Positions 8,794 through 63,875 of a stretch of DNA of 64,000 bases are shown one piece after another. The notes under the pieces were generated by a model. That model made no database searches, was not told where the DNA came from, and saw nothing but the letters and a program-made list of their open reading frames with translations. The translations under genes and the position numbers were made by a program. The stretch covers positions 1-64,000 of IMG/VR virus record IMGVR_UViG_3300031957_002643; one strand, given 5' to 3'. Positions within the stretch are counted from its first letter, which is position 1. Each line of letters begins with the position of its first letter.

Positions 8794-9111
8794 ATGTCAT
8801 ATACAAAATTACCGACTGACGATCTTGCAAAAGAGTTCGTAGATGATGTGACTCGTCAGATAGTTTCCGGTAAGAAGAACTTGTCCGATGGTGAAAAGCG
8901 CGAAGTAGATATCAAAATCCAAGGATTGATGCTAACTGCTGAAATAATTCATCATTGTTTCCTTTATGGTATGAGTAAAAACAAAGCACAATTGGAAGAA
9001 ATTCGAAAGATACTAGTCCAAAAACTTATACCACTCGGATACAAAACACCCGAAGGTGATGCATATCAGTATGTTTTGTTGGATCAAATAAATGGATTTG
9101 AATTCAAATGA
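8794..9111 (+). CDS. hypothetical protein (degenerate motif NGFEFK at C-terminus)
   Basis: AGGAG RBS. Confidence 0.7.
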   Translation: MSYTKLPTDDLAKEFVDDVTRQIVSGKKNLSDGEKREVDIKIQGLMLTAEIIHHCFLYGMSKNKAQLEEIRKILVQKLIPLGYKTPEGDAYQYVLLDQINGFEFK

Positions 9112-9371
9112 GTAATCCTTATCAATGTGTCGAAATCCCCCTGTTTGCACCAATGACGGTTGATAATTTGATGGATTGCATTGAATATCACTCGTATTAT
9201 AACTACGAAAAACAACGAATGGATATGACAGACCGGGAACGTTGCAATGATCTAAATGCAATTCGGCATCATATTTTAGATTTGCGAGATTACTGTGGTG
9301 TAAAACAAGGACGCATTGGACCTAGACGGTGGATGAGTGGTATGTCGGAGTTTGAATTCAAATATGACTAA
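9108..9371 (+). CDS. hypothetical protein (degenerate motif SEFEFK)
   Basis: ATGA overlap; resembles next ORF (MTD.ER...LN). Confidence 0.65.
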   Translation: MSNPYQCVEIPLFAPMTVDNLMDCIEYHSYYNYEKQRMDMTDRERCNDLNAIRHHILDLRDYCGVKQGRIGPRRWMSGMSEFEFKYD

Positions 9372-9621
9372 TCAGTTGTTTGAAGATTGCTATTATTCTT
9401 GGCGCTACCATGTTGAATGCCTGAATGATGCAGTGATGACTGATGCTGAGCGCCAGCAGTATGTTCAATCGTTGAACAATAGCTTTAACGTCATGAAGAT
9501 ATTGATTAGTTCGGAATATGGTGACCATGGTGTACGCGCGGGTAAAGTACATCATGACGGATGGCAATATGATTGGCATGTGTTACCGCCAGCGTATGAA
9601 GTGAGACTGAACCATGACTGA
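9364..9621 (+). CDS. LP-motif small protein
   Basis: LPPAYEVR near C-terminus; start adjusted. Confidence 0.65.
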   Translation: MTNQLFEDCYYSWRYHVECLNDAVMTDAERQQYVQSLNNSFNVMKILISSEYGDHGVRAGKVHHDGWQYDWHVLPPAYEVRLNHD

Positions 9622-10048
9622 ACAATACAATTATTTCAAAATACATGCTGATGTTTTTAGTGATTGGTTGGATGATCTGCCAACCGATATGTTGTTCGAT
9701 AATAGAATTAGCGTGCTCGAAGAATTTTTGAATCTATTTTATCCAAAATTGAGTTTCACGTTAACAGAAACCAATATGTATTGGAGTGATGTGACACCGA
9801 ACGGGCGGCAAAAGACGGTGATTCGTGATATCGTCATGAGTCCGAACACATTCGAAATCGTCTCACATCGATATGATTATTTGGAACCAAACGAAAACCC
9901 AATCTCAAAAACGCCTCAACACTACTGCGAATTAGATGATTGGGCCGTGAAGTTGGGGAAATATATGAGAACATTTGGCCAGAAGGTTCCAATTGGGAAT
10001 GTGAAATACAAAATGAAAACACTGATGGGTGCAGGGTATGCAGGATGA
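9614..10048 (+). CDS. hypothetical protein
   Basis: Tiled ORF. Confidence 0.6.
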   Translation: MTEQYNYFKIHADVFSDWLDDLPTDMLFDNRISVLEEFLNLFYPKLSFTLTETNMYWSDVTPNGRQKTVIRDIVMSPNTFEIVSHRYDYLEPNENPISKTPQHYCELDDWAVKLGKYMRTFGQKVPIGNVKYKMKTLMGAGYAG

Positions 10049-10277
10049 GATTGATATTGCCTTGACTTATCTGGCGTCTCGTAAGATTCAATTTGATGAC
10101 ATTCGAAGACGCCGCCTGACAGACAAGAGACGAGTACTTTCATTGCTCGTCCATCACAGGTTGGTCAAGCTACGATATCAGGTCAAAGAATTAGTGGCTT
10201 TGGGTGTTCAAAAGTTCGAATATGATGGTTACCGGTATGAACCCTTACCGGACACATATGAGGTATTAATCTGGTGA
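10038..10277 (+). CDS. LP-motif small protein
   Basis: LPDTYEVL near C-terminus. Confidence 0.6.
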   Translation: MQDEIDIALTYLASRKIQFDDIRRRRLTDKRRVLSLLVHHRLVKLRYQVKELVALGVQKFEYDGYRYEPLPDTYEVLIW

Positions 10278-10558
10278 CGTTTATTGTAATCGATACGGCT
10301 ATTGCGAGTGATGTGGAACTCATCAGTGCTGAGCTTTTGCACTATCTGGACCATCCACCCGGTACTAAATTTTGGTGCCCAGAAATGGTCGATGGGCGCT
10401 TTATTAGCAATATGAAATTGCGGGAGCGTCTTCTGGATGAAGTGTATTCAAAACTCCGCAAATTGTCACATCATGAGATATGTGAGGCTCTTCATATTCT
10501 CAAATCGGCAGGATATGATTATCGGTCACTGCCAGCGGATTACGAGGTGAAATTATAA
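10274..10558 (+). CDS. LP-motif small protein
   Basis: LPADYEVK at C-terminus. Confidence 0.65.
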   Translation: MTFIVIDTAIASDVELISAELLHYLDHPPGTKFWCPEMVDGRFISNMKLRERLLDEVYSKLRKLSHHEICEALHILKSAGYDYRSLPADYEVKL

Positions 10559-11604
10559 TGGCATTATTCAACAAGGTTGCAAGTTTCAGTGATATTCACT
10601 TCGGTGAAGATGGCGACAGCAAATATCACAACGAGCTATGCATCTCGTATATCAAATGGTTTATTGATCAGTGCAAAGAGAATGATGTCGATCTGATTAT
10701 CTTCATGGGCGACTGGCATCATGCGCGTTCGAAGGTTGGATCGGAAACCCTCAAATATTCATACAAGGGAACCAAGCTCCTCAACGAGTGTGGTATTCCA
10801 GTTCTGTTTCTGATCGGCAATCACGATCTCTTCTATCGTGAGAACCGTTCCGTGCACTCATTGCCGTGGCTGTATGAGATGGACAACATCACGGTCATTG
10901 ACGATCCAACTGTCATGGATGATGTTCTTCTGGTCCCATGGCTGGTTGAAAGTGATGACCTCAAACAGATTGCCAATGTCAAAGTGAAATATGCGTTCGG
11001 CCACTTTGAACTTCCCGGCTTCCTCATGAATGAGAAATATGCGTTCCCAGATAAAGAAGGCATTCTCAAGAGTGAAGACATGGACCATCTGGAATACGTG
11101 TTCTCTGGTCACTTCCATGCCCGCCAAAAGAGAACCATGAAGTCCGGCTGTGAAATTCATTATATTGGAAACCCGTTCCCTCATGATTTTAATGATGTGA
11201 ATGACCGGGAACGTGGCATGATGATTCTTGAATACGACAACAAACCACAATATATCAATTGGCCGGATGCTCCGTACTACGAGAAGCTAACACTTTCTCA
11301 ACTGTTGGAACAGCCAGAAAAGTTTGATAATAATTCTCACATTAAGGTCATCCAAGATGTTGAGATGACTTCGACTGAGAAGGACGAATTGCGCCAAACT
11401 TTGTTGGAGAATTTTGGTATCGTTCATGTGAGTATTGAACCAGATCGCACCAAAGACAAAGATGGTAACCAAATCGTCAGCGAAGATGATGAAGTCTCGG
11501 ATATCGAGAATGTGGAATTGTATGTGGTGAATTGGATTACCGAGAACGAAGCCACGCGCAAAGATCGAATGATTGAACTCTTTACCAAAGCACAAGCCAT
11601 ATGA
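10558..11604 (+). CDS. 47: recombination endonuclease subunit gp47 (Mre11/SbcD-like)
   Basis: SDIHFG, MGDWHH, IGNHD, GHFE, FSGHFH phosphoesterase motifs. Confidence 0.92.
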   Translation: MALFNKVASFSDIHFGEDGDSKYHNELCISYIKWFIDQCKENDVDLIIFMGDWHHARSKVGSETLKYSYKGTKLLNECGIPVLFLIGNHDLFYRENRSVHSLPWLYEMDNITVIDDPTVMDDVLLVPWLVESDDLKQIANVKVKYAFGHFELPGFLMNEKYAFPDKEGILKSEDMDHLEYVFSGHFHARQKRTMKSGCEIHYIGNPFPHDFNDVNDRERGMMILEYDNKPQYINWPDAPYYEKLTLSQLLEQPEKFDNNSHIKVIQDVEMTSTEKDELRQTLLENFGIVHVSIEPDRTKDKDGNQIVSEDDEVSDIENVELYVVNWITENEATRKDRMIELFTKAQAI

Positions 11605-11843
11605 TTCGCGATACCATCATAGCGGAACGATTTGATCCGATTGCACGTAAGCTTCTTGTGTCACATGCACACGAACTATCATCGAGAGAAGTTGATGGCT
11701 TGGAAGCAGTAAAAGATTTGTGCTCGCCCGAAATCCGCAGCCGTGTTGTTCGAAAGCTAAAACTTCATAATCTTGGAAGAACATCCGCTTCATTTAATTA
11801 TGTATCAAAAAGATATTTGCGGGGAATATTAAATGCTTCGTGA
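11601..11843 (+). CDS. hypothetical protein (MIRDTI N-terminus)
   Basis: ATGA overlap with gp47. Confidence 0.6.
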   Translation: MIRDTIIAERFDPIARKLLVSHAHELSSREVDGLEAVKDLCSPEIRSRVVRKLKLHNLGRTSASFNYVSKRYLRGILNAS

Positions 11844-11988
11844 TATCATATACAAAACTGCCCGAAATGAATTATACGGGTTACAATGTAGCAACATAGT
11901 GCTTTTGCCCATAATAAAGCGCACACTAGAAGAAACAAAAAGCATTTTACGTGCTATTGAGAATGGAAATCGCACCAATGCTTCGTGA
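11833..11988 (+). CDS. hypothetical 51-aa protein (MLRDII), not in the ORF track
   Basis: Hand translation MLRDIIYKTARNELYG...NRTNAS*; fills the gap exactly. Confidence 0.55.
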   Translation: MLRDIIYKTARNELYGLQCSNIVLLPIIKRTLEETKSILRAIENGNRTNAS

Positions 11989-12181
11989 TCTGATTTTCAA
12001 CCAAGTGGTTTGTAGTACCTATGGGGATGTTCCGTTAGAAACCACATGTTGTGTTTTGAGTTCTTCAAGTGGATTTTTACATAATCATGCAATAAGAAAA
12101 ATAAAACAAGCTGAAGAGCGAAGAAACAGATTGGAGGCGATTAAACGACAAATCGCAAAGAGACAATTATGCCTACTTTAG
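11978..12181 (+). CDS. hypothetical protein (MLRDLI)
   Basis: Start adjusted to the overlapping ATG. Confidence 0.55.
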   Translation: MLRDLIFNQVVCSTYGDVPLETTCCVLSSSSGFLHNHAIRKIKQAEERRNRLEAIKRQIAKRQLCLL

Positions 12182-12438
12182 TGCCCGCACTGGCGGATAG
12201 CTGGCTTCAAGCCGTGAGTAACTTGATTGATGATGTACACATGAATGCTCCAAAGACATTATTAGACCTGCTGCATAAGCGATATGGCACAAATAACCTG
12301 TTGGACCGCTTGAAAGATCATAAAGAAGAGCGTATTATGATGGCTCGGATTTATTACAACATGGGCGTTACACCTTATGGAACACGATTTTACAAACTTC
12401 CCAGAGATTACGCAATCAAGTTTAGAGATGCTTATTAA
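12169..12438 (+). CDS. LP-motif small protein
   Basis: LPRDYAIK. Confidence 0.6.
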   Translation: MPTLVPALADSWLQAVSNLIDDVHMNAPKTLLDLLHKRYGTNNLLDRLKDHKEERIMMARIYYNMGVTPYGTRFYKLPRDYAIKFRDAY

Positions 12439-12673
12439 TGATGTTTCGGAATACCATCGTCTTCCCTCTGGCTTCGTCTTCAAGCCTATCATCGAAGACG
12501 AATATGGTGTGCTACCCGTAGAATATTTGATGATTGACGACAACGGGACTTTGTGGTCTATTACGCCATCAGATGAAGAGTTTGAGTACTGGAACCAAGT
12601 CGTATTTGAAGGCCATTCGCCTGATGAGATACGACAGTTGGGTATGGCATTGATGAAAGAGGTACTTGGGTGA
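12428..12673 (+). CDS. LP-motif small protein
   Basis: LPSGFVFK. Confidence 0.6.
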   Translation: MLINDVSEYHRLPSGFVFKPIIEDEYGVLPVEYLMIDDNGTLWSITPSDEEFEYWNQVVFEGHSPDEIRQLGMALMKEVLG

Positions 12674-13002
12674 TGCACGGCAGTTATGAATACGAATTGA
12701 TCGAACCCGATGATGCTGTTCCATTTTTTGACCCGAAATCGCTGAAATTCAGCAATGTCATGATCGTCAACAACGAAACGATAAACATGATTGCGGAAAC
12801 CGCTGACGTTGGTGAACTGAAACAACTACCGCCTGTGTTTGATTTCAAAGTCGATGACAAACCGGGCATTAGACTCACCGTGTTGGATGGCGATAAAATC
12901 CAACACTTTTATTTGTCCATATGGAGAGCGTGTGGAAGTCAACCGAGTGCATTGCCTATCTATGCACCAAAACTAATGGAACGTATAGGGGAATACCTAT
13001 GA
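12670..13002 (+). CDS. LP-motif small protein
   Basis: LPPVFDFK. Confidence 0.6.
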   Translation: MMHGSYEYELIEPDDAVPFFDPKSLKFSNVMIVNNETINMIAETADVGELKQLPPVFDFKVDDKPGIRLTVLDGDKIQHFYLSIWRACGSQPSALPIYAPKLMERIGEYL

Positions 13003-13316
13003 GTGAAACTGATCTGGTTGCCAAAGAAAAGTATGGCAAGACAATCATTGAATGGAACTTCACTACAGGTGAAGTGACATCTCGTTTGTACAGTGAAGTC
13101 AAGAAAACATTCGAGAAGCCAAGCACGGTCACTCGAACAAAAAACATTATGTCTGATCTTCGTAAGCCGGGGGATGATTACTTTGTCCTTCCAACGGGAT
13201 TTGAACTCAAGCTCAATCCGGCACTACCGAGATTCCTTGATCTAGAACAAGATGTCGCAGTGTTTCCAGCCGATGACGAATATAAAAGACGCTTTGCACA
13301 AATTGCCACGGATTGA
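12999..13316 (+). CDS. LP-motif small protein
   Basis: LPTGFELK. Confidence 0.6.
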   Translation: MSETDLVAKEKYGKTIIEWNFTTGEVTSRLYSEVKKTFEKPSTVTRTKNIMSDLRKPGDDYFVLPTGFELKLNPALPRFLDLEQDVAVFPADDEYKRRFAQIATD

Positions 13317-13617
13317 CTACGTTTGCTCTGTTCATTATGATCATGTGGATGTTATAATTGATACATCCTCACACAATGAGCAATCATACGAGCAAATAGA
13401 AGTTCAAGGTGGTATAATATGGCAACCACTGCAAGATATGGTCTCACTGCCAGATAGTTTTGAAATCACTGGTCTGAGTATCGGTGGTGATTATGATAAC
13501 ATAAATTTTAATAATATTTATGTTGAAAATGATGTCAAAATGTATATTCTTTGCGGTAAATTAAAGGATGACTTATTCAACAAAAAAGGTAAAATACAAA
13601 GCGAGGAAAACGCTTGA
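13273..13617 (+). CDS. LP-motif small protein
   Basis: LPDSFEIT. Confidence 0.55.
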   Translation: MTNIKDALHKLPRIDYVCSVHYDHVDVIIDTSSHNEQSYEQIEVQGGIIWQPLQDMVSLPDSFEITGLSIGGDYDNINFNNIYVENDVKMYILCGKLKDDLFNKKGKIQSEENA

Positions 13618-13933
13618 TGTGGGCGCTTTCTATTGTCCATACATCCCGCTTGATATGCCTATTATTCGTACATTTCTATTTCCTCTGCCCCATTGGAGAG
13701 GCAACGGCTCTTTTCACACAAAAAAGATTGAGCTAGGAACGGTTCATGATAAATGCTTGGTGGAACCAACTGCCGAGTGCGATGTCTTCCAATTGGTAAG
13801 CCTTCCAAAAGACTTTACTTTCAAACCAGTTTTCAATACAGTGCATCTGACTATTCCGATTGGTAACGGTAAGATCAAGAAGATTTGCCACGGGTCGGAT
13901 GAATTCAAGGATGAGTTGAAAAAACGGCTATGA
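13568..13933 (+). CDS. LP-motif small protein carrying a major-capsid C-terminal-like peptide
   Basis: LPKDFTFK; DVGAFYCPYIPL. Confidence 0.6.
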   Translation: MTYSTKKVKYKARKTLDVGAFYCPYIPLDMPIIRTFLFPLPHWRGNGSFHTKKIELGTVHDKCLVEPTAECDVFQLVSLPKDFTFKPVFNTVHLTIPIGNGKIKKICHGSDEFKDELKKRL

Positions 13934-14286
13934 GATTGTCTTCTCGCATACGATACATGATCGGCTTTGCCGAAGATCAATTGGCTACGTGGAAGCCACG
14001 ATTGCCCGTCCTCAATGGCAAGATTGTACAAAACAATAGCAATGGAACTGTAGCCGTTAGAGAGAAAAACAAATATGGTAAACGTCCCAAACTCGATGGC
14101 TTGCTAAGTTTTGTTGATACGCGATTTGGCACAGGCGAAATTCACTCATTGCCTGATTCGTTTTGCTTCAAACCCAAACAAAATAAACATGAACTGATTC
14201 GAATTCCGATCCATTCAACACGTGACGATGATAAGTTTCTTGGCTTTCTGACATTGACCCCGCGTTGGATCAAAGAGAACTCGTAA
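13930..14286 (+). CDS. LP-motif small protein
   Basis: LPDSFCFK; C-terminal GFLTLTPRWI shared with next ORF. Confidence 0.6.
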   Translation: MRLSSRIRYMIGFAEDQLATWKPRLPVLNGKIVQNNSNGTVAVREKNKYGKRPKLDGLLSFVDTRFGTGEIHSLPDSFCFKPKQNKHELIRIPIHSTRDDDKFLGFLTLTPRWIKENS

Positions 14287-14684
14287 TGGGTCTTGCTGCA
14301 AAGATACGTGAACGGGTTGAACAAATTCAAGCCGATATCAACTTATTACATTCTGATGCCCTTCAGGCTTATTCAGGACGCCAACAATCCCATATAATCC
14401 GCAAAAGACTTCCGCGTAAGTTGCGTGTTATTAAAATCCATCACAAGTGGAATGGTTATATTGATATTATTCATAATATCTGTGAGGATTGGTTTAAAAA
14501 TATAGAAACTGGCAAGTACTACAAGGTCAAAGAATATTTTGATACATCCGATAAAAAGGAAGTGACAGTCTTACCAAATAGTTTTGAATTCAAAATCACA
14601 CACAACTCAAAACATGCGTTCAAGACGCACATCGAGGGGTATGGATTTCTGACTTTTACCTATAAGTGGCTTAGAAACAATTAA
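14286..14684 (+). CDS. LP-motif small protein
   Basis: LPNSFEFK; GFLTFTYKWL. Confidence 0.6.
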   Translation: MGLAAKIRERVEQIQADINLLHSDALQAYSGRQQSHIIRKRLPRKLRVIKIHHKWNGYIDIIHNICEDWFKNIETGKYYKVKEYFDTSDKKEVTVLPNSFEFKITHNSKHAFKTHIEGYGFLTFTYKWLRNN

Positions 14685-14726
14685 TAATTTGTCCTATGAT
14701 GTGAGCATATTATTCATGAGGTTCTT

Positions 14727-15335
14727 ATGCTCTATCTATTCCGTCATGGTGAAAGCCTGACCAACATCAAACTCGATGAAGTTTGCAACTTTCCACTTAA
14801 TGACGACAATACGGTTCTGACCACACAAGGAATGATGCACGCCATGGACGTGGGCATGCGTTTGAAAGATCAAGGCGTAAGACCTGACATCATTTTCACA
14901 TCACCATTAGCCAGAGCACGACAAACCTCATATATTTTGGCATCATCCATGGAGCACGGATGTCCCATCGAAGTGATCGATGATCTCCATGAAATCGTCT
15001 GGCACAAGAATGGTGTCTTCGAGCGCCACGAGAATTACAGAGACATTGATGGGTGTTTCAAAACGGTAGACGAAAGACCATTGCCGGGTCTAGAAAATCA
15101 ACGAGACGTTTACAACCGTGTCGTCAGCCACATTCCAAAACTCATCACCGAAGCATTGTCCGGCAAAACTGTTTTCTGCGTCTCTCACTATTTTGTCATC
15201 AGAGCGATTAGAGCCTATCTGGATCATAACGATGTTGAATTCATGCCACACTATGACCCAAAGAATGTTGATCCAGTAATCTACACCGAAGCATTACTTG
15301 GCAGTCTATCAACCACCAAAATGTCGGCACTATGA
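14727..15335 (+). CDS. histidine phosphatase (phosphoglycerate mutase family)
   Basis: LFRHGES, SPLARARQT, VSH motifs. Confidence 0.9.
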   Translation: MLYLFRHGESLTNIKLDEVCNFPLNDDNTVLTTQGMMHAMDVGMRLKDQGVRPDIIFTSPLARARQTSYILASSMEHGCPIEVIDDLHEIVWHKNGVFERHENYRDIDGCFKTVDERPLPGLENQRDVYNRVVSHIPKLITEALSGKTVFCVSHYFVIRAIRAYLDHNDVEFMPHYDPKNVDPVIYTEALLGSLSTTKMSAL

Positions 15336-15721
15336 ATGCAATGAGTATCATCCCAGAAGATATAATAAACGAATGGGCCATCGAAGCCGCCAAACAGGTT
15401 CCATACACACATGAACCACTTCCAACTGAAGGGTTCTGTTTCAAATGGTCACCAAAACAACTTAAAGGAGTATTTCTTAGCTACTTCTATGAAATCTCAC
15501 AGTTTTTAGACGATGATGATTACAAGCGCTTATTTTACAATGATATAAAGGTTGCTCAAACGTATTATGATAGCCCTAAAATCCACAAAATGGGACCAGC
15601 GGGTATAATTAAGATGGAGAGTGATACTGGTGCATGCGCCGTATGCGTGTATGCGAATGCCGTGTGTGAAAGAACTGATTTAGATGAAACACTTTATGAC
15701 TGCGAAGGTTCAAGTAGTTGA
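15332..15721 (+). CDS. LP-motif small protein
   Basis: LPTEGFCFK (one-residue insertion). Confidence 0.6.
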   Translation: MNAMSIIPEDIINEWAIEAAKQVPYTHEPLPTEGFCFKWSPKQLKGVFLSYFYEISQFLDDDDYKRLFYNDIKVAQTYYDSPKIHKMGPAGIIKMESDTGACAVCVYANAVCERTDLDETLYDCEGSSS

Positions 15722-16106
15722 TCACGAGATTGATGCTCTAACTGATGTAGAAACGGATGAACACAAGGTTCATTATTACTACAAACCAATCAGTAATGCT
15801 AAAAAGGGAATTCTAGATGATTCTGAAGCAGAAAGCGTTGTCTTCTATCTATTCTACAAGAAATTCAGAGAAGGCAAAAAGCTTCCTTCTGGTTTTGAAG
15901 TCAAAATCCCAGAACAGCATATAGAAAACAAGTTCATCCCAACGGATAGCGCCTACAATTATGGCGAAGGGCGTTCATTTGCGGAATGGGGCATCTGTTA
16001 TCCTGTAGCTAATATCCATCTCGTTGATGGTACCTACATTGATGAAGACGGAGATGAAATCTACGATTACTTCGTGCAGTTTGACTTGGTGGTGAATGGT
16101 TTATGA
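15684..16106 (+). CDS. LP-motif small protein
   Basis: LPSGFEVK. Confidence 0.6.
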   Translation: MKHFMTAKVQVVDHEIDALTDVETDEHKVHYYYKPISNAKKGILDDSEAESVVFYLFYKKFREGKKLPSGFEVKIPEQHIENKFIPTDSAYNYGEGRSFAEWGICYPVANIHLVDGTYIDEDGDEIYDYFVQFDLVVNGL

Positions 16107-17452: not shown

Positions 17453-17473
17453 CAAAACTCATATGATGGTGTC

Positions 17474-22577: not shown

Positions 22578-22585
22578 AACGTCCT

Positions 22586-26223: not shown

Positions 26224-26228
26224 TACTA

Positions 26229-32316: not shown

Positions 32317-32333
32317 GATATGCCTTCCGGTCA

Positions 32334-32339
32334 TAAATA
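32334..32339 (+). promoter_or_regulatory. putative late promoter (TAAATA), 5 nt before ATG
   Basis: CATAAATAtcgggATG at the boundary between two arrays. Confidence 0.65.
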
Positions 32340-32344
32340 TCGGG

Positions 32345-35924: not shown

Positions 35925-36690
35925 CACTTACCTGTTTGAAGAAACAAAGGTGACTGATCCATTTGAGTTTTTCAAGACTGTGGAAATTAATACATTGGAT
36001 GATTATCTCAAACTTAGAGACAATTACAGATTTGAAGTATCCAATTTCGTTCTCTTGTTTGACAAGAATGGACGCAAGAAGGGTGATCAAGTCATGGAAC
36101 ATAGAAGAGTTAATAAATGGATTCACATCTATCTTGATAACAAGAAGGGTTTCAACAATTTCTACATCAATTTGGATGGAATACTGATTAGGGCTGAGAT
36201 GTCACAAATGGAAGCATCTGATAGAATGACTACGTTCAGAATGACGCCCAATAGATATCTTCCATCATCGATCAATGTGTTTGCTTCAACGGGTGATCCT
36301 GCTGGTTTGACATGCTCATGGGAGACTCGTTCTGTAATCAATCCATTGGATAAATCATTTACCATTTTCAGTAAGTTTGCGAGTTATTATCTTCTATCGG
36401 AACAAACCACAAAATTGGAACAATCGACGGGCGGAATAAAGACATTGGATTTGTTTCTCGAAAGTCTTGAAACGCTTAAAGAGATGGTTGCAGCGAATGT
36501 GGATGCTGGTTTCATTGACTATCTCGATGCGATGGAAGCAGTTAGAGATTTCTCCGATAAGGCGATTGAGAAGACTTCAAGACATGCTATCACTTACGAA
36601 CCAGAGTATAGAGACGAATACAGAGAAATAATCGGCGGTATGGCACGTGCTAGGGACGAATTATTTGCACAATATGAAAGGAATAGGTGA
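35911..36690 (+). CDS. putative virion-internal protein (MKSLNTYLFE)
   Basis: LLFDKNGRKKGDQ. Confidence 0.7.
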   Translation: MKSLNTYLFEETKVTDPFEFFKTVEINTLDDYLKLRDNYRFEVSNFVLLFDKNGRKKGDQVMEHRRVNKWIHIYLDNKKGFNNFYINLDGILIRAEMSQMEASDRMTTFRMTPNRYLPSSINVFASTGDPAGLTCSWETRSVINPLDKSFTIFSKFASYYLLSEQTTKLEQSTGGIKTLDLFLESLETLKEMVAANVDAGFIDYLDAMEAVRDFSDKAIEKTSRHAITYEPEYRDEYREIIGGMARARDELFAQYERNR

Positions 36691-37445
36691 TGGACTTTAT
36701 TGATCAGGCTTATGCTGAATTTAGAAAGCATGATTTCAATGATTTGGAAATCATCAAAAATTATCGTTTCCCATTGAAGATGCCAGAAACGGCATTTAGC
36801 GCGTATCGTTATAGAGATAGTGACGATACAGACATCAAGGCTATCAAATTTTTTGGCACAGCAAAAAACGGACAAACTGGTGCTTTCTTTGTGTTTCCAG
36901 AAGAAAGGGACACGATAGCCGCACAACCAAATGCGTTTGGTGTTTCAATCAATGATGGTAAGCTGTATCGTGTATGTTGGGGTGCAAAATTTGGTCGATA
37001 TGAGCCTGACATCTCTAAAGTAGTATCAGAGAGATATTCTGGACCAGCAGAGATATGGATACAGGCCGATAACGACAAACTCAGTTACAAATGGCGTGTT
37101 GGAACCTATTCGGAAAGTATGAATCCTCCTCGACCATACAGAATGGCGGAACAGATGATTATTCATGAGGTGATACATGAATTTTCAACGGGTGATACGT
37201 GGCGTGCATTTGCGAATGTATCCAACCATTTTCTGACTGTAGAAGCAAAGATCATATTCATGTTTGAAAACTCTTATATTGATATCGATCTTAGAAATGA
37301 ACTTGTCAAAAGTGCATTTAATTGTTCGCTTGAATTATTGAACAATATGGCCGACAAAAAAGACAGTGAGGATCGAAAAAGAGCAGACGAGTACATTAAT
37401 AATTTTATCCGCAAGATCGGACCAATTTTGAAGAAATATAAATAG
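36687..37445 (+). CDS. paralog of the same family lacking the N-terminal tag
   Basis: Shares PN...I..G....V.W, GPA and NSYID segments with neighbours. Confidence 0.65.
   Translation: MMDFIDQAYAEFRKHDFNDLEIIKNYRFPLKMPETAFSAYRYRDSDDTDIKAIKFFGTAKNGQTGAFFVFPEERDTIAAQPNAFGVSINDGKLYRVCWGAKFGRYEPDISKVVSERYSGPAEIWIQADNDKLSYKWRVGTYSESMNPPRPYRMAEQMIIHEVIHEFSTGDTWRAFANVSNHFLTVEAKIIFMFENSYIDIDLRNELVKSAFNCSLELLNNMADKKDSEDRKRADEYINNFIRKIGPILKKYK
37437..37444 (+). promoter_or_regulatory. T4-type late promoter TATAAATA, 4 nt before ATG
   Basis: Exact T4 late consensus. Confidence 0.7.
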
Positions 37446-37448
37446 AAG

Positions 37449-38267
37449 ATGCGTATTCGTTCAATCATCACCGAAGGCATTGTTGCCGATGCCGAAAAGC
37501 TTTATCATGAGATTGAAAAGCTGGTTGAAACCTTTGAGCCTACAGAAGAATGGTTCAAAGTTGCTAATGCTCGTATAGCGCTTCCAAAGACGGAATTTCT
37601 TACATTTGATAAAAATGATAGAATGTATGGTGGTTTGTTCCATTGGAAACAGCCTCATATGAATGTCTTAGTCTGGTTTAAACCTCAGAAAAACCCAGCC
37701 CATAATACACAACCGCCAAATTATATTTCTATAGGGCTGAAATCTGGAAGAATTCGAGAAGTTGGATGGACACAAGCTCCTATCGTTGATGATACTGATG
37801 ACATAAAATTCCACAAAGTGAATGGTCCAGCGGTATTCGAAACCAACTATATGGGCGATCAGATGCGTGTCAGTGGACTATGGTATGTCAATGGGTATTA
37901 TCATTTGCCACGTGATGTAATGAATGCATTGTTCCAATACGCGAAGCATAATAATCCTTTTGTTGATACTTTAGACCATGATGATCGGCTAGGTATACAT
38001 GATGAATTACCATACCCAAAACAATTTGATCTGACAATGAAATGGGTGAAGGAGTTTGTCGATAATGGATATGGTTCTGGTGAAGAAGCTATAAAGGCGA
38101 TGAATGGTACGATCAAAAGAATTGTCAATGATGAACAGCTAACGCTTGACGTTGTTTTCGGCAACGAGGATTCTGATTCTGATGCGAAGAATTGGGATGC
38201 GGGTGTTCAACGTCTAGAAGCTTGGAAAACTGATGCTGAAGCTCGTGTAAGGGAGGCGTTCGCATGA
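37449..38267 (+). CDS. putative virion-internal protein (MRIRSIITE)
   Basis: HKVNGPA; DNGY...EEA. Confidence 0.7.
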   Translation: MRIRSIITEGIVADAEKLYHEIEKLVETFEPTEEWFKVANARIALPKTEFLTFDKNDRMYGGLFHWKQPHMNVLVWFKPQKNPAHNTQPPNYISIGLKSGRIREVGWTQAPIVDDTDDIKFHKVNGPAVFETNYMGDQMRVSGLWYVNGYYHLPRDVMNALFQYAKHNNPFVDTLDHDDRLGIHDELPYPKQFDLTMKWVKEFVDNGYGSGEEAIKAMNGTIKRIVNDEQLTLDVVFGNEDSDSDAKNWDAGVQRLEAWKTDAEARVREAFA

Positions 38268-38806
38268 GATTGAGGCAGCTCGTTGAAAAGAAGAGAACCT
38301 TCAAGACAGAAGCGTATTATGATGCCGATGGGAAATTTCATCGTTTAGATGGGCCAGCTTATGTGTCCTATTACGACAATGGTCAATTGTATCGAGAGGT
38401 TTGGAGGGAACACGGTAGATATAAAAGAGACGATGGCCCGTGCTTGGTTAACTATAGTGTCAACGGAGTACTAACGGAACAGATATGGAATAGTAACGAT
38501 AAGCCCGACGAGGTTCCCACAAAATATATTGATACTGAAACTGGAGGGATTGTCATGTCTTGGGGACTGATAAATCCCCCCTATGAGTTTTACTCACACA
38601 GACTTGATGGACCGGCTGAAATTGTTTGGGATCAGAAGAAAAACGAAATGAGATGTTTCTGGTATATCGACAATTACATGTACGGATATAGAACCAGCAG
38701 TATTAATGAACCACCGCAACAATTCTTGAAACAGAGAGAACATGAAACGGATGATCCATTCCCTGAAAAGGTAAAAGTCTTGTTACCGAATGGAGAATAT
38801 CTATGA
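38264..38806 (+). CDS. HRxDGPA-repeat protein (MRLRQLVE)
   Basis: HRLDGPA twice, RDDGP. Confidence 0.75.
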   Translation: MRLRQLVEKKRTFKTEAYYDADGKFHRLDGPAYVSYYDNGQLYREVWREHGRYKRDDGPCLVNYSVNGVLTEQIWNSNDKPDEVPTKYIDTETGGIVMSWGLINPPYEFYSHRLDGPAEIVWDQKKNEMRCFWYIDNYMYGYRTSSINEPPQQFLKQREHETDDPFPEKVKVLLPNGEYL

Positions 38807-39414
38807 GGTTAAATCAGATCGTTGAATCCAAGAAGAAAAAATTCACGCAAACCGAGATGTACTATGACAAAAACGGCAAAATGCACCGGTTGGATGGTCC
38901 TGCTTATAGCGGGTACAGGTCACACCAGAAATTGGCTAGAGAAGAGTGGTTAATTCATGGAAAACACCATTCTAAAGAACACCCATCTCTTATTTTGTAT
39001 TATCCTAAAGGCACGCCTAATATGGAGGCATGGGATTGGTTTGGTAAAGGGCACCGGTTAGATGGTCCTGCTGTAACATATTATAATCCTGATGGTACCG
39101 TGTCGAAAACCGTATGGTTAAAGGATGGGCAAACTCATAGAGATGAGGATTTACCAGCAGTATACGATTACGAGAATCGAGATTATCAGTGGTATAAAAA
39201 TGAAAATCCGCACCGAGACAATGGTCCTGCTGGTGTTAGAAGGGTGAATGGTCGTTGGTATTATGAGTGGGTATTTCATGGAAATAATTTTGGCGAAACT
39301 GAAGACCCAAATAATCCACCCGGTGCATATTTGGATTATCGAAAAACTTATAACAAAGAACCATTCCCAAAAGAGGTTTGGATCAAGATTGAAGGTGAGC
39401 CAGATTTCTCATGA
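38803..39414 (+). CDS. HRxDGPA-repeat protein (MRLNQIVE)
   Basis: About five repeats (HRLDGPA, HRDEDLPA, HRDNGPA). Confidence 0.75.
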   Translation: MRLNQIVESKKKKFTQTEMYYDKNGKMHRLDGPAYSGYRSHQKLAREEWLIHGKHHSKEHPSLILYYPKGTPNMEAWDWFGKGHRLDGPAVTYYNPDGTVSKTVWLKDGQTHRDEDLPAVYDYENRDYQWYKNENPHRDNGPAGVRRVNGRWYYEWVFHGNNFGETEDPNNPPGAYLDYRKTYNKEPFPKEVWIKIEGEPDFS

Positions 39415-39812
39415 TTATTGAACGCATTCAGTATTGTGACAAAGATGGGCATGTGTCTCGTTTGGATGGCCCTGCTGCAATTGAATATTCTGGCGGTAAA
39501 AAAGATTCATTTTTTACCGCATGGTATTATTCTGGTCTTTATATTCGTAGACAAGATAATGACTATGCAGAAATGATGCCTGCAAAATTTGTTCAGTATT
39601 TGCATTATCACATGTACAATCATGTCCCCCAAGGGGAAGTTGTCAAAGTATTCACGGACATTATCAAGAAGATTTACAAAGGTGGATACTTGAGTAAGAA
39701 AGACGCAGTTAAATACATTAGAGAATACAAAATTGCAGATGAGACCAATGACTTGCCAAATCCAAGATGGGTTGGACAGGATTTAGGTATTATGGATGAC
39801 GAGATGTACTGA
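39411..39812 (+). CDS. single HRxDGPA-like repeat plus helical domain
   Basis: SRLDGPA; GGYLSKKDA. Confidence 0.65.
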   Translation: MIIERIQYCDKDGHVSRLDGPAAIEYSGGKKDSFFTAWYYSGLYIRRQDNDYAEMMPAKFVQYLHYHMYNHVPQGEVVKVFTDIIKKIYKGGYLSKKDAVKYIREYKIADETNDLPNPRWVGQDLGIMDDEMY

Positions 39813-41476
39813 TGAAGCTGAGACAAATTGTTGAAGATACAGGATTAAAGAACTATCGAGAGGATTACTATAAAGTATCATCCGATGGACCAGATGTTCT
39901 TCATCGCGACGATGGACCGGCACATGCTATCTACAAAAACGGTAAACCAGTTCTTGAGCACTGGTATCAAAATGGATCAACACATCGTGACAGCGACAGT
40001 CCTGCTTGCACGCATATCAATAATGATAAGAAAACAGAAATATGGTACAAAGATAACGTCAAACATAGAGAAGGTGCACCTGCTCAAATTGAAACCAGAT
40101 TGAATGATATTGGTTATGACATTGAGAAATGGTTCTTTATGGGTGTTGCCCATCGTGATACCAAGGATGGACCACAAGAAACATGGAAAAATTCTGTTGG
40201 TACAGTTTACAAGCAAATATGGTTGGATAAAGATAAGGGACATCATCGTGAAGATGGACCATCATTTATCATGTATCAGCCGAATGGACAGGTCGCCAAA
40301 GAAGAATGGAAAATCAATAATAAACTCCATCGTGATTCCGAGGATGGTCCCGCGTATATCGACAATATGAACAATGACATACGGTACTATTGGAAGGGAA
40401 AGATACACAGACTGGATGGACCTGCATGGGTCGTTGATGGATCATCCGAATGGGCCGTTAACGGCGAGACGATTTGTCTGTCCGATGATCTGAATTTGCC
40501 AGAAAAGTATAGAGAAGCATTTGAAACTGCGGTTGCCGAATACAAAAAGAATAATCCTATCACTGAGGCTAAGGTTATTCGAGATGGTCAGATCACATAT
40601 TACGATCATGTTTCCAGACGTGATCTCCAAAGGCTGATTACTGATAATGAAGAGATCAGAAAATATGGTATGCGTGGCGTGTACTCAGATAGTTTATCTG
40701 TAGCGTCATCCTTAAGAGCACATCATGTGAACTTGGTAAATAATACGGGCAATAACGGTTCATTGATTATTATCGGTGCCAATCGAAAACAATTGGACCA
40801 TATGGACCACAACAATAAGTTCATTTTCTTGTTACCAGATTTAGATAACTGGTTGTTGGAATTCGTTGAACCAAGGGTTTATGATCACTATTCGTTGGTT
40901 CGAATGTTGAATGATATGACTAAAATATTTGGCACCATGAAGCTGATCAAGGCGAATAGAAGAATGCCCGGCTTTCAAGTGTTTGATGAGATCGAGGTTG
41001 GACAAGTATTTGCACCATTGACCGAAGCTAAAGTGATCAAGGATGATGCTAGTTTTGGGTATTCTCAAGGCAAGCAGATTTACACCAAGCTTGCTCGCAG
41101 AGATGCAACCATGCTTTTGGAGAAATACAAGAGAGATGGCATTCGCTTCATCATCACAGAAGATGAAATGTATTATGGACCGCCTGCTTTGTTTTACCAT
41201 TATTCAATAGCAAGTCTTGCTGGTTATGACATTTATGAAGATCGAATGGATTGCGCTGTTGTTGCTCGTAGTGCTGCACAAATTTATAGCATGGAGATGA
41301 CATTCAGAAAATCTGATCCAGTCTTGGTGCTTGAGGATCATCCCGGTTGGTTCATCATGTTGAGGGGCCAGCCATTGCTGTATAAATTCCCATTGGAAGC
41401 AACGATTGCACGCTTGCAGCCTGTATGGGGCAAGATAAGTATTCAAGAAGCAGCGTTGTATTTCGATGAGAATTAA
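39812..41476 (+). CDS. HRxDGPA-repeat protein fused to two repeated domains; putative polyprotein (MKLRQIVE)
   Basis: About seven repeats; internal PITEAKVI and PLTEAKVI junctions. Confidence 0.75.
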   Translation: MKLRQIVEDTGLKNYREDYYKVSSDGPDVLHRDDGPAHAIYKNGKPVLEHWYQNGSTHRDSDSPACTHINNDKKTEIWYKDNVKHREGAPAQIETRLNDIGYDIEKWFFMGVAHRDTKDGPQETWKNSVGTVYKQIWLDKDKGHHREDGPSFIMYQPNGQVAKEEWKINNKLHRDSEDGPAYIDNMNNDIRYYWKGKIHRLDGPAWVVDGSSEWAVNGETICLSDDLNLPEKYREAFETAVAEYKKNNPITEAKVIRDGQITYYDHVSRRDLQRLITDNEEIRKYGMRGVYSDSLSVASSLRAHHVNLVNNTGNNGSLIIIGANRKQLDHMDHNNKFIFLLPDLDNWLLEFVEPRVYDHYSLVRMLNDMTKIFGTMKLIKANRRMPGFQVFDEIEVGQVFAPLTEAKVIKDDASFGYSQGKQIYTKLARRDATMLLEKYKRDGIRFIITEDEMYYGPPALFYHYSIASLAGYDIYEDRMDCAVVARSAAQIYSMEMTFRKSDPVLVLEDHPGWFIMLRGQPLLYKFPLEATIARLQPVWGKISIQEAALYFDEN

Positions 41477-41963
41477 AGACCTATTGCCTGAAACTGGAAT
41501 TATGTCGGAGTCAAAAAGACTTCCGGGTAAGAATCCGTTGAACAGCATCTATTATGATATCAGGAAAGCAGAGGTTTCCAGATTATTGGAAATCAACGAA
41601 CATGATGGGCTTCGCGGTTACTATGATCGTGAATATCATGAGATGTTCGTAAGCAGTTCCAGATCACATCACCATGCCGATATTTTTGACATTGCTGGAA
41701 GGCATGGAATGATTCAGTGTCATGATGGTTTTGAATTCTGCATTGCCAAAAGTCTTCTACAGTTGAACCATATGGAATGGGATTTGCCTGAACGTGAGGG
41801 TACAGCTTATATGCTTGCTGATCATCACCCGTGGTTCATTGTAACCCATTTCTCTCATCAAATGAAAACGGCCATGACCAAATTTGAAAAGACGTTTGGC
41901 AAGTTGGTTGAGATTACCCGTGACAATAGAGATCAGGTATTGTTTGAATCTATATGTGAATGA
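41466..41963 (+). CDS. stand-alone paralog of the polyprotein C-terminal domains
   Basis: R......L......G[MIL]R, [VS]SS...HH pattern; MRIKDLLPE N-terminus. Confidence 0.65.
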   Translation: MRIKDLLPETGIMSESKRLPGKNPLNSIYYDIRKAEVSRLLEINEHDGLRGYYDREYHEMFVSSSRSHHHADIFDIAGRHGMIQCHDGFEFCIAKSLLQLNHMEWDLPEREGTAYMLADHHPWFIVTHFSHQMKTAMTKFEKTFGKLVEITRDNRDQVLFESICE

Positions 41964-41983
41964 CTTGTAAACATTAATAAAGT

Positions 41984-42484
41984 GTGGTAAATATATTGAA
42001 GTTGTTGAAATTATTTGAGGGTGATATGGATCATGCTGCGCATATGGCGAAAACTGGTTATTGGGGCAAACAAGGGGCCGGACTGGTATTCTTTTGCACT
42101 CGGACTAAAAGATTTTGCTTATCTTTTCGGTCGTCCTTAGTCGCTGAGCCTCATACGTGGTCCACATGGGGTGGTGCTATGGATGAGGGCGAGGAACCCG
42201 CAGAAACGGCTGTACGGGAGGCTCACGAGGAAACAGGGTTATCTCTGGACATCAAGAAGCTTACCCGTATTCATGTGAACCAGATTCCAAATGTTTTCAC
42301 CTACACGACATTCGTTGCTCTTGTGAATGAAGAGTTCGAACCGCACACTGAAGGCAATTGGGAAGTTGATGGTTATGAGTGGTGCAAGTTTGGTGATTGG
42401 CCAGAGCCTTTACATAAAGGCATGAAACAAACCCTGACCCATCAACCGGCTTTGGACATTCTTGAGGAACTTAGTCGTAGATGA
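41984..42484 (+). CDS. Nudix hydrolase with capsid-targeting-like N-terminus (start uncertain, possibly TTG 41996 or 42002)
   Basis: Nudix box GGAMDEGEEPAETAVREAHEETGL; KLLKLFE; TAAATA at 41988-41993. Confidence 0.88.
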   Translation: MVNILKLLKLFEGDMDHAAHMAKTGYWGKQGAGLVFFCTRTKRFCLSFRSSLVAEPHTWSTWGGAMDEGEEPAETAVREAHEETGLSLDIKKLTRIHVNQIPNVFTYTTFVALVNEEFEPHTEGNWEVDGYEWCKFGDWPEPLHKGMKQTLTHQPALDILEELSRR

Positions 42485-63870: not shown

Positions 63871-63875
63871 GAGAT

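What the first reader, a model, noticed from the sequence alone, without database searches (positions are those of the whole stretch)
8794..42484. Three consecutive arrays, each with its own peptide tag: a possible genome-ordered protein addressing system
Seen: about 55 accessory ORFs fall into three contiguous blocks with mutually exclusive tags (LP motif; M[IL]xD..E18; M[RK]Lxx[IL]xE). The boundary between blocks 2 and 3 is sharp and coincides with a late promoter. Known: the third tag resembles the T4 capsid-targeting sequence. Inference: the other two tags may likewise sort cargo to different destinations or partners, giving a modular constant-tag/variable-payload arsenal.
Basis: inference. 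Interest (0 to 1): 0.75.

Follow-up and report, generated by a model that had tools for sequence, protein, structure and literature searches.

The report
Capsid-tagged late array beside two paralog arrays
In an uncultured 335-kb marine jumbo phage, one of the three "tags" looks like a portable T4-style capsid-targeting/protease-cleavage peptide, carried by about 25 late proteins, while the other two are conserved motifs of phage-specific gene families and not address labels.

Summary
The window is the first 64 kb of a 335,552-bp T4-like jumbo phage from seawater. About 60 co-directional, mostly overlapping ORFs do form three sets with distinct motifs.

- **Block 3 (32345-41963).** The tag M-[KR]-[IL]-x-x-[LI]-x-E is real and N-terminal. 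It is also portable: it sits on about 25 proteins genome-wide that form at least 18 unrelated groups. It ends in the [LI]xE site expected for the phage's gp21-type prohead protease. That same site marks the capsid-protein propeptide boundary and is dense in the scaffold protein. The block 2/3 boundary coincides with a late-promoter-like CATAAATA placed 5 nt before the ATG, a layout found at 18 genes. This fits a T4-like capsid-targeting sequence on late, probably leaderless, transcripts.
- **Block 2 (22143-32316).** This is one 27-copy tandem family found in no other sequence among 1.84 billion cluster representatives. Its "tag" is the start of a long first helix of one compact fold. It also holds the upstream gene's stop codon.
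- **Block 1.** The LP motif (LPxxFEFK) is real but sits at N-terminal, internal or C-terminal positions.

A three-way addressing system is not supported; a single capsid-addressing tag is. No expression or virion data exist.

The parts
6289..6858 (+). gp55-type late sigma factor (context: it predicts T4-type TATAAATA late promoters)
   Evidence: phrog_12791 and phrog_234, late sigma factor, E 1e-26 and 7e-25
7936..8748 (-). 270-aa protein starting MKLLNVFED. It carries tag 3, lies just outside the finding, and is a paralog of the tagged 123857-124741(-)
   Evidence: PSSM score 9.9 at an ORF start; BLAST family
8794..10558 (+). Block 1a: six small ORFs. Five end with the (LP)xx[FY]E[FV]K motif at or near the C-terminus
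10558..11604 (+). gp47/SbcD-like recombination nuclease subunit (core gene, not part of the arrays)
   Evidence: phrog_100, E 3e-66
11601..12673 (+). Short ORFs with tag-2-like starts (MIRDTI, MLRDII, MLRDLI; MLINDV at 12428) and 11-nt overlaps, but with no block-2 payload
   Evidence: the A1 profile matches only their first 11-16 residues, E above 0.2
12673..17452 (+). Block 1b: small ORFs with the LPxxFEFK motif at internal or N-terminal positions, plus a phosphoglycerate-mutase-like ORF (14727-15335) without it
17474..19624 (+). gp46/Rad50-like recombination nuclease subunit (core gene). It lies next to gp47 in a related Vibrio jumbo phage, so block 1 fills an expanded gap
22143..32316 (+). 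Block 2: 27 tandem genes of about 120 aa, one phage-specific family. Predicted fold: helix(2-32)-helix-3 strands-helix. 24 of 26 junctions overlap by 1, 4, 8 or 11 nt
32332..32339 (+). Late-promoter-like CATAAATA, 5 nt before the ATG of the first block-3 gene
32345..38267 (+). Block 3a: eight paralogs of 230-270 aa. Seven have an N-terminal peptide ending in [LI]xE; 36690 lacks it
37437..37444 (+). Perfect TATAAATA, 4 nt before the ATG of 37449
38264..41476 (+). Tagged HRxDGPA-repeat (MORN_2/YwqK-like) proteins 38264, 38803 and 39812, plus 39411-39812 without the canonical tag
41466..41963 (+). 165-aa tagged protein (MRIKDLLPE), related to the C-terminal part of the 39812 protein
41984..42484 (+). 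NUDIX hydrolase, the last gene of the + run. A TTG start at 41996 would give MKLLKLFEGD, a tag-3 match; the true start is uncertain
   Evidence: PF00293, E 9e-15; PSSM score 11.6

Best explanation
The region is a hyperplastic arm of a T4-like marine jumbo phage, filled by lineage-specific tandem gene expansions. Only one of the three 'tags' is an address.

Block 3 (32345-41963). It is transcribed from gp55-type late promoters placed 5 nt before the first ATG, so the first gene of each unit is probably leaderless. The following genes have Shine-Dalgarno sites and overlap by 4-14 nt, which suggests translational coupling. Its proteins carry an 8-10-residue N-terminal peptide, M-[KR]-[IL]-x-x-[LI]-x-E. 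I infer that this peptide works like the T4 capsid-targeting sequence: it brings the protein into the scaffolding core of the prohead and is then cut off after the Glu by the phage's gp21-family protease. The cargo would stay inside the head and be ejected with the DNA. The same late-promoter-plus-tag unit is attached to at least 10 further unrelated genes around the genome.

Block 2. It is a 27-copy tandem family of one small alpha/beta domain. Its conserved start is the beginning of helix alpha-1. Those codons are also constrained because the upstream gene's stop codon lies within codons 1-4. I guess it is a diversifying set of early or middle host-interaction proteins; that function is inferred only.

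Block 1. Its ORFs share a position-independent LPxxFEFK peptide motif of unknown partner.

Shown here: the motifs, their statistics, the protease, the site usage in capsid and scaffold proteins, the promoter-like elements and the family relationships. Inferred: packaging, cleavage, timing and leaderless initiation.
For: Tag 3
- There are 16 strict matches, all at ORF starts, against about 1.1 expected. The PSSM scan breaks cleanly after about 20 hits.
- K/R and L/I are encoded by different codons, so selection acts on the peptide.
- The 26 tagged proteins form 18 BLAST-unrelated groups once the first 10 residues are removed.
- Homologs of the HRxDGPA-repeat payload in other organisms lack the tag.

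Protease and its site
- Peptidase_S77/gp21 lies at 74308-74940 (82.9 bits; phrog_207, E 1.5e-48).
- All four [LI]xE sites of the capsid protein lie in its first 53 residues. The last one (LME) precedes the segment I matched by eye to the start of mature T4 gp23, and none lies in the remaining 353 residues.
- The scaffold protein has 17 sites in 360 aa against 6.8 expected, the second-highest density in the genome.

T4 reference sequences read from NC_000866
- ipII and ipIII start MKTYQEFIAE, gp24 MAKINELLRE, gp67 MEGLIE, gp68 MLLIPE.
- Papers state that T4 internal proteins share only the CTS (PMC3012670) and that gp21 removes N-terminal propeptides of 10-20 residues (PMC5694885).

Late timing
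- A gp55 homolog is encoded.
- Of 70 ATAAATA sites, 18 are followed by ATG at exactly 5 nt; every other spacing has 3 or fewer. These include the first gene of the portal-to-capsid-protein cluster (68885), gene 32345 and 8 of the dispersed tagged genes.
- The + strand of the window has no ATAAATA between 8794 and 32316.

A related Vibrio jumbo phage has MKLVELFEAN on the small protein between portal and protease.

Block 2
- AF2 models of two distant members have the same topology (pLDDT 87.6 and 85.3).
- hhalign of sub-groups B and C gives 91% probability even without the first 22 residues.
- 14 of 27 members are recognised without the tag by leave-one-out profiles.
- The upstream stop codon lies inside the next gene's start at 24 of 26 junctions.
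- The only 27 hits in 1.84 billion representatives are the phage's own genes.
Against: - There is no transcript, virion-proteome or cleavage data. Only DNA runs from seawater hold this phage.
- The tag resembles the T4 CTS in pattern only, not in sequence.
- Internal [LI]xE sites in the mature parts of tagged proteins are only weakly depleted (observed/expected 0.94 against 1.24 genome-wide). Three tagged proteins (39812, 41466, 78920) are rich in such sites.
- Two block-3 genes lack the tag.
- The complex prediction of protease with a tagged protein gave no answer.
- For block 2, the nine proximal genes (22143-25412) match the rest significantly only through their first ~37 residues. Both AF2 models used the same 27-sequence alignment.
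- Four short ORFs outside the array carry a tag-2-like start on other sequences.
- Beyond an 18-residue stretch around the LP motif, block-1 ORFs are not alignable. This would also fit a portable module.
Confidence: 0.6

Rival explanations
1. One reading: three independent peptide address labels (LP, M[IL]xD..E18, M[RK]Lxx[IL]xE) each send a set of variable cargos to a different destination or partner.
For: - Tag 3 does behave as a portable label.
- Block-1 ORFs share only about 18 residues around the LP motif.
- The nine proximal block-2 genes share significant similarity with the rest only in the first ~37 residues.
- Tag-2-like starts occur on four short ORFs with other sequences.
Against: - The LP motif is N-terminal, internal or C-terminal, so it is not an N-terminal tag.
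- The block-2 'tag' is the start of a 30-residue helix that is part of one conserved fold. The payload is homologous in at least 18 of 27 members.
- Neither motif is found on clearly unrelated, well-supported proteins elsewhere in the genome.
- Neither motif ends in a protease site.
Confidence: 0.1
2. Tag 3 is only a protease-removed propeptide, or a feature of translation initiation on leaderless late mRNAs. It has no targeting role, and the proteins are not packaged.
For: - 8 of the dispersed tagged genes and 2 array genes sit 4-5 nt after ATAAATA. The first codons of such genes could be constrained for leaderless initiation.
- A-rich second codons are common.
Against: - Nine tagged array genes have ordinary Shine-Dalgarno leaders and overlaps, yet keep the tag.
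- K/R and L/I are encoded by unrelated codons.
- Other ATAAATA-N5-ATG genes lack the tag.
- A cleavage site for a protease that, in T4, is assembled into the prohead core and acts there (PMC5694885) implies co-localisation with the prohead.
Confidence: 0.15
3. All three motifs are plain residues of common descent: the best-conserved segments of tandem paralogs, with no signal function at all.
For: - BLAST and profile comparisons show real paralog families in blocks 2 and 3.
- Overlapping stop and start codons constrain the first codons.
Against: - After tag removal, the tag-3 bearers fall into 18 unrelated groups spread over the genome.
- The repeat payload has untagged homologs in other organisms.
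- The tag ends in the protease site that is also used in the capsid protein.
Confidence: 0.1

Closest known systems
T4 capsid-targeting sequence (CTS) of internal proteins IPI/IPII/IPIII and Alt, and the short gp21-cleaved propeptides of gp24, gp67 and gp68
   Same: - A short N-terminal peptide begins with M plus a basic residue and ends in [LI]xE. T4 ipII and ipIII start MKTYQEFIAE and gp24 starts MAKINELLRE.
- A gp21-family protease is encoded.
- The tag is the only thing that diverse cargo proteins share (PMC3012670).
- The genes appear to be late.
- Hydrophobic residues are spaced i, i+3, i+4.
   Different: - There is no sequence homology to the T4 CTS.
- The tag is 8 residues long, not 10.
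- About 25 proteins bear it, not about 5-8, and 11-12 of them lie in one 10-kb tandem array.
- In 10 of the tagged genes the tag is fused directly to a late promoter 4-5 nt upstream, implying a leaderless transcript, whereas the T4 ip genes have normal leaders.
- Packaging is untested.
Processed ejection and inner-body protein paralogs of giant phages phiKZ, 201phi2-1 and SPN3US
   Same: - These are giant phages with many head-internal proteins cut after Glu by a gp21-related protease.
- Paralogs can keep identical N-termini while the rest diverges, as in SPN3US gp53/gp54 (PMC5694885).
- A diverged, probably inactive protease paralog is also present here (58706-59086), as with SPN3US gp117.
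   Different: - The cleavage motif there is [AGS]-x-E, and many propeptides exceed 100 residues.
- Here the motif is the T4-type [LI]xE and the propeptide is about 8 residues.
- Those phages belong to a different lineage, with phage-encoded RNA polymerases.
Lineage-specific tandem paralog expansions in large phages (hyperplastic regions between core genes)
   Same: - Blocks 1 and 2 lie between and beside core genes. Here 6 kb separates gp47 from gp46, which are adjacent in Vibrio phage 2.275.O.
- The genes are small, co-directional and overlapping.
   Different: - Block 2 has 27 copies of a family with no detectable member outside this phage among 1.84 billion cluster representatives.
- Its predicted fold has no convincing match in PDB, BFVD or AFDB clusters.

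Membership tests
T4-type CTS / gp21-cleaved N-terminal propeptide (tag 3) | The phage encodes a gp21-family (Peptidase S77) prohead protease | tested here: met
   PF03420 at 74308-74940, 82.9 bits, over the cut-off; phrog_207, E 1.5e-48
T4-type CTS / gp21-cleaved N-terminal propeptide (tag 3) | A short (6-20 aa) N-terminal peptide ending in [LI]-x-E | tested here: met
   11 of 13 block-3 genes and at least 10 other genes. T4 references read from NC_000866
T4-type CTS / gp21-cleaved N-terminal propeptide (tag 3) | The same site is used in known protease substrates: the capsid-protein propeptide boundary and the scaffold | tested here: met
   All 4 sites of the capsid protein lie in residues 1-53 and none in the mature 353 aa. 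The scaffold has 17 sites against 6.8 expected
T4-type CTS / gp21-cleaved N-terminal propeptide (tag 3) | The tag is shared by otherwise unrelated cargo proteins | tested here: met
   18 BLAST-unrelated groups among 26 bearers; untagged homologs of the repeat payload exist in other organisms
T4-type CTS / gp21-cleaved N-terminal propeptide (tag 3) | Late expression together with head genes | tested here: inconclusive
   ATAAATA-N5-ATG at 32345, TATAAATA-N4 at 37449 and the same layout at 8 dispersed tagged genes; a gp55 homolog is present. No RNA data exist
T4-type CTS / gp21-cleaved N-terminal propeptide (tag 3) | Sequence homology to the T4 CTS (MKTYQEFIAE) | tested here: not met
   The likeness is in pattern only (M, basic residue, hydrophobic pair, E); no alignable identity. 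It works like a CTS but is not a homolog
T4-type CTS / gp21-cleaved N-terminal propeptide (tag 3) | Physical incorporation into proheads and removal of the tag | not testable with these tools
   The phage is uncultured and known only from a seawater metagenome. Complex prediction gave no answer
Single tandem paralog family (block 2) | Full-length homology of all members, not only of the N-terminus | tested here: inconclusive
   Met for the 18 distal members (hhalign 91% without the first 22 aa). The 9 proximal members match significantly only through residues 1-37, although the AF2 topology is the same (both models used the same alignment)
Portable N-terminal address label (tag 2) | The motif occurs on clearly unrelated payloads and is separable from the folded domain | tested here: not met
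   The motif is the start of helix 2-32 of the domain. Outside the array it occurs only on four short ORFs at 11601-12673
N-terminal address label (LP motif, block 1) | Fixed N-terminal position | tested here: not met
   The position ranges from residue 3 to residue 96 in block 1, and the motif sits within 13 residues of the stop in six ORFs
MORN_2 / YwqK-like repeat proteins (38264-41476) | A match to PF07661 or PF20530 repeats | tested here: inconclusive
   No Pfam hit at E below 0.01. Sequence homologs carry PF07661/PF20530 and the same HRxDGPA repeat. Structure leads have TM 0.57-0.83 by the hit

The most novel reading that the evidence does not exclude
All three motifs are docking modules. 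(1) The late-promoter-plus-8-residue tag is a portable cassette that turns any ORF into a late, leaderless, capsid-packaged and ejected protein, which would give the largest CTS-addressed cargo set known. (2) The position-independent LPxxFEFK peptide is shared by otherwise unalignable ORFs wedged between the gp47 and gp46 genes. (3) The conserved first helix of the 27-copy family is the third module. Motifs (2) and (3) would each recruit their bearers to a different common partner. Together this would be a three-channel, genome-ordered sorting of accessory proteins.
Probability: 0.12. Interest if true: 0.85.

Novelty: new variant of a known kind. Interest (0 to 1): 0.58.

Why it matters
If the tag works as inferred, this phage packages and injects an unusually large and diverse protein arsenal: about 25 proteins in at least 18 families, 11-12 of them in one array. 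It would do so with a minimal 8-residue address fused directly to a late promoter. That extends the T4 CTS principle well beyond the Tevenvirinae. It also offers a compact, testable packaging signal for a distant capsid system and points to candidate ejected anti-defence or host-takeover proteins in marine jumbo phages.

The apparent leaderless layout of 18 late genes would be an unusual expression strategy for a T4-type late promoter; T4's own ip genes and a related Vibrio jumbo phage have ordinary leaders.

The 27-copy family has no relative in 15 billion proteins. It is a striking case of rapid gene birth and expansion within one phage lineage.

Tried and rejected
- **Close relatives.** Megablast of blocks 2 and 3 against 50,697 phage records found nothing. 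tblastn of the 554-aa repeat protein found nothing. The search for related loci with gp46 in IMG/VR found no relative. Conservation of the arrays in close relatives therefore could not be tested.
- **Family and homolog searches for blocks 2 and 3a.** Pfam and PHROGs gave nothing significant for block 2, block 3a or the ten dispersed tagged proteins. The search for homologous proteins with the block-2 and block-3a profiles returned only the phage's own proteins.
- **Fold searches of the block-2 model.** PDB Foldseek, BFVD, the VIA-align wide search and AFDB clusters gave no convincing match. The best Z was 4.9, to halves of 2H-phosphoesterases, which is within noise.
- **Iterative HMM search without tags.** It stalled at 6 members, so I replaced it with leave-one-out profiles and hhalign.
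- **Promoter scans.** Sigma-70 promoter matches were at chance level, so no early promoters could be assigned to blocks 1 and 2.
- **LP motif as a DNA repeat.** I tested the 12-bp palindrome TTTGAATTCAAA. The L and P codons vary and the motif is always read in frame, so it is a peptide-level motif.
- **Blocks 1 and 2 as one superfamily.** hhalign probability was 0.1%.
- **LP motif as a clamp-binding tail.** This was a lead from memory of T4/RB69 polymerase and gp55 tails. The phage's gp55 C-terminus has no such motif, so the idea stays untested.
- **Block-2 junction as a conserved DNA recombination cassette.** Information content upstream of the ATG is 0.4 bit or less per position, so this is not supported.
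- **RNA evidence.** No RNA run holds this phage, and read laying was not used.
- **Complex prediction (protease plus the 38264 protein).** No answer; it counts neither for nor against binding.
- **Depletion of internal [LI]xE in tagged proteins.** The effect was weak.

Full report
**Source and context**

The window is bases 1-64000 of a 335,552-bp virus record with direct terminal repeats. It was assembled from seawater metagenomes, and only DNA runs hold it. It has no close relative in the phage, IMG/VR or protein collections.

Its gp46-like protein is about 29% identical to those of Rak2-like and other jumbo phages such as Salmonella SE_PL and Munch, Vibrio phage 2.275.O, CBB and XacN1. The core genes are T4-like:
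- gp55 late sigma factor at 6289-6858, gp47 at 10558-11604 and a GroES-like gene at 20311-20598;
- gp46 at 17474-19624;
- further along the genome, a portal, gp21-type protease, scaffold and capsid-protein cluster at 71328-77285.

**The observation**

From 8794 to 42484 there is one co-directional run of about 60 small ORFs with almost no intergenic space. After refining the starts, three sets appear.

*Block 2 (22143-32316).* These are 27 consecutive genes of 116-158 aa, and all start M[IL]x[DN]x[ILV]. M1 and E18 are the only invariant columns. Independent gene calls in the public protein collection use the same starts.

*Block 3 (32345-41963).* These are 13 genes, 11 of which start with a peptide ending in [LI]xE at residues 8-11: MRLRSIVE, MRLRNIVE, MRLSNIIE, MKSLKTYLVE, MKSLNTYLFE, MRIRSIITE, MRLRQLVE, MRLNQIVE, MKLRQIVE, MRIKDLLPE and MVHSLRKYLIE.

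*Block 1 (8794-17452, interrupted by gp47).* The motif LPxx[FY]E[FV]K occurs in 17 of 20 ORFs, against 8 loose matches in 530 other ORFs.

The motifs are therefore real and far above chance. Two details of the description fail, however.
- The LP motif is not N-terminal. It lies at residues 3-11 in three ORFs, within 13 residues of the stop in six, and internally in about ten.
- The tags are not exclusive to their blocks. Tag-2-like starts occur at 11601, 11833, 11978 and 12428. Tag 3 occurs on 7936-8748(-) and on many genes outside the window.

**Tag 3 is a genome-wide, portable N-terminal signal**

The strict pattern M[KR][ILV]xx[LI][FILVYTP]E occurs 16 times in my ORF set. Every occurrence lies within the first 11 codons of an ORF, against about 1.1 expected for a Met-preceded match. 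A PSSM scan over all 8,433 candidate starts breaks cleanly after about 20 hits, all at ORF starts. Ten strict bearers lie outside the window.

Several results show that selection acts on the peptide and that the tag is separable from its payload.
- Lys/Arg at position 2 and Leu/Ile at position 6 are encoded by unrelated codons.
- After the first 10 residues are removed, 26 bearers fall into 18 BLAST-unrelated groups.
- The HRxDGPA-repeat payload of 38264-41476 has homologs in many other organisms, annotated as MORN_2, YwqK or DUF6745. None of them carries the tag.

For this tag, 'constant tag, variable payload' is correct.

**Why it looks like a capsid-targeting and protease signal**

- The genome encodes a Peptidase_S77 (T4 gp21) prohead protease.
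- The capsid protein has four [LI]xE sites, all in its first 53 residues. The last one (LME) sits directly before a segment that I matched by eye to the start of mature T4 gp23. The remaining 353 residues have none.
- The scaffold protein has 17 sites in 360 aa against 6.8 expected from composition, the second-highest density in the genome.
- I read the T4 references from NC_000866. ipII and ipIII start MKTYQEFIAE, gp24 MAKINELLRE, gp67 MEGLIE, gp68 MLLIPE and gp21 MNEPQLLIE. gp22 carries 16 such sites.
- Reviews state that T4 internal proteins are a diverse set sharing only the CTS, which places them in the scaffolding core (PMC3012670). [quoted passage not shown]
- In the related Vibrio phage 2.275.O, the small protein between portal and protease, at the position of T4 gp67, starts MKLVELFEAN. 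Its capsid protein has LME before the mature start.

The tag here matches the T4 signals in architecture and hydrophobic spacing but not in sequence. It works like a CTS; it is not a homolog of one.

**Late-promoter link**

CATAAATA lies at 32332-32339, 5 nt before the ATG of 32345. A perfect TATAAATA lies 4 nt before the ATG of 37449. These are the only ATAAATA sites on the + strand of the window.

Genome-wide, 18 of 70 ATAAATA sites are followed by ATG at exactly 5 nt, and no other spacing has more than 3. These genes include the first gene of the head cluster (68885) and 8 of the dispersed tagged genes.

From my own knowledge of T4, the late promoter occupies positions -13 to -6. A 5-nt spacer would then put the transcript start on the A of the ATG, giving leaderless late mRNAs. 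This is an inference.

Genes inside the array have Shine-Dalgarno sites and overlap their predecessor by 14, 11, 4 or 1 nt, yet they keep the tag. The tag is therefore not a by-product of leaderless initiation. The Vibrio relative has TATAAATA with ordinary leaders and no N5 arrangement.

**Block 2 is one family**

*Fold.* AF2 on the 27-member alignment gives a confident compact model (pLDDT 87.6, pTM 0.79). Its elements are a helix at 2-32, a short helix, three strands and a C-terminal helix. The 'tag' and E18 lie in the first helix. A proximal member (24636) modelled with the same alignment has the same topology (pLDDT 85.3).

*Sequence.* Without the first 22 residues, 14 of 27 members are still recognised by leave-one-out profiles ahead of any other ORF. 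Sub-groups B and C still align at 91% probability. The nine proximal genes match the rest significantly only through the first ~37 residues, so their payload homology rests on the shared predicted fold and on length.

*Junctions.* At 24 of 26 junctions the upstream stop codon lies within codons 1-4 of the next gene, with overlaps of 1, 4, 8 or 11 nt. ATGATTAATGAT (M-I-N-D) contains stops in both other frames. This arrangement suggests translational coupling and adds a nucleotide constraint on the first codons. D4 is also kept where there is no overlap. DNA conservation upstream of the ATG is negligible.

*Distribution and function.* The family has no Pfam or PHROG match and no convincing fold relative. 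A full HMM scan of 1.84 billion cluster representatives returned exactly the phage's own 27 genes. The function is unknown. Because no late promoter precedes the array and the genes are small and diversifying, I guess it encodes early or middle host-interaction proteins.

**Block 1**

Beyond an 18-residue stretch around LPxxFEFK, the ORFs do not align with each other. They are not related to block 2 either (probability 0.1%). The L and P codons vary, so the motif is a peptide motif and not a DNA repeat. Its position-independence is typical of a short linear interaction motif, but the partner is unknown.

In the Vibrio relative, gp47 and gp46 are adjacent. Block 1 therefore fills an expanded gap between two core genes.

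**Verdict**

The three arrays are tandem, lineage-specific expansions in a hyperplastic genome arm. One tag is very probably a T4-like capsid-targeting and protease-cleavage peptide, coupled to late and probably leaderless promoters. It is used on about 25 proteins, 11-12 of them in the window's third block. The other two motifs are family or linear motifs without evidence of an addressing role.

Nothing here has been tested experimentally: no expression, cleavage or virion data exist for this phage. The complex prediction gave no answer, and depletion of internal cleavage sites in tagged proteins is only weak.

Noticed in passing
genome-wide; in the window at 32332-32347 and 37437-37451, and on the - strand at 63870-63883: Of 70 ATAAATA sites in the genome, 18 are followed by ATG at exactly 5 nt. 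With a T4-type late promoter this implies leaderless late mRNAs. A related Vibrio jumbo phage has none of these and uses ordinary Shine-Dalgarno leaders.
   Followed up: partly
window 58706-59086 (+): A 126-aa paralog of the gp21-type prohead protease: 28% identity over 120 aa, E 4e-9. The region that aligns with the His-containing motif reads differently, so it is probably inactive. This recalls the diverged protease paralog gp117 of SPN3US.
   Followed up: partly
window 41984-42484 (+): A NUDIX hydrolase closes the tagged array. A TTG start at 41996 would give MKLLKLFEGD, a good tag-3 match. In T4, nudE lies two genes from ipIII and ipII. This may be coincidence.
   Followed up: no
window 7936-8748 (-): A 270-aa protein starting MKLLNVFED carries tag 3. 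It is transcribed divergently from the start of block 1 and has paralogs at genome 123857-124741(-) (tagged, with ATAAATA-N5) and 150666-151958(+).
   Followed up: partly
window 10558-19624: The gp47 and gp46 genes are separated by 6 kb of block-1 ORFs, whereas they are adjacent in Vibrio phage 2.275.O (MG592671).
   Followed up: yes
window 9097, 9351, 14583: The perfect 12-bp palindrome TTTGAATTCAAA, which contains an EcoRI site, occurs three times in the 335-kb genome, each time encoding F-E-F-K of the LP motif. One-mismatch versions cluster in block 1.
   Followed up: partly
genome 71328-73505 (outside the window): After a Gly-rich linker, the portal ORF carries a C-terminal ~130 aa that weakly resembles the separate gp67-position protein of the Vibrio relative (tblastn E 0.04). 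It is flanked by LTE and LKE sites, so it may be a fusion released by the protease.
   Followed up: partly
window 12428 (inside ORF 12377-12673): An internal ATG overlaps the previous ORF by 11 nt, as in block 2. It gives MLINDV... followed by the LP motif at residue 12, that is, a tag-2-like start on an LP-motif protein.
   Followed up: no
window 19624-21087 (+): A run of small, very hydrophobic ORFs lies around the GroES-like gene (20311-20598). They are probably membrane proteins and carry none of the three motifs.
   Followed up: no
genome about 250.9-251.0 kb (outside the window): The sequence just upstream of the repeat-protein paralog at 251033 looks like the 3' end of a tRNA (GGTTCGAATCC...CCA). 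No tRNA genes lie in the window itself.
   Followed up: no
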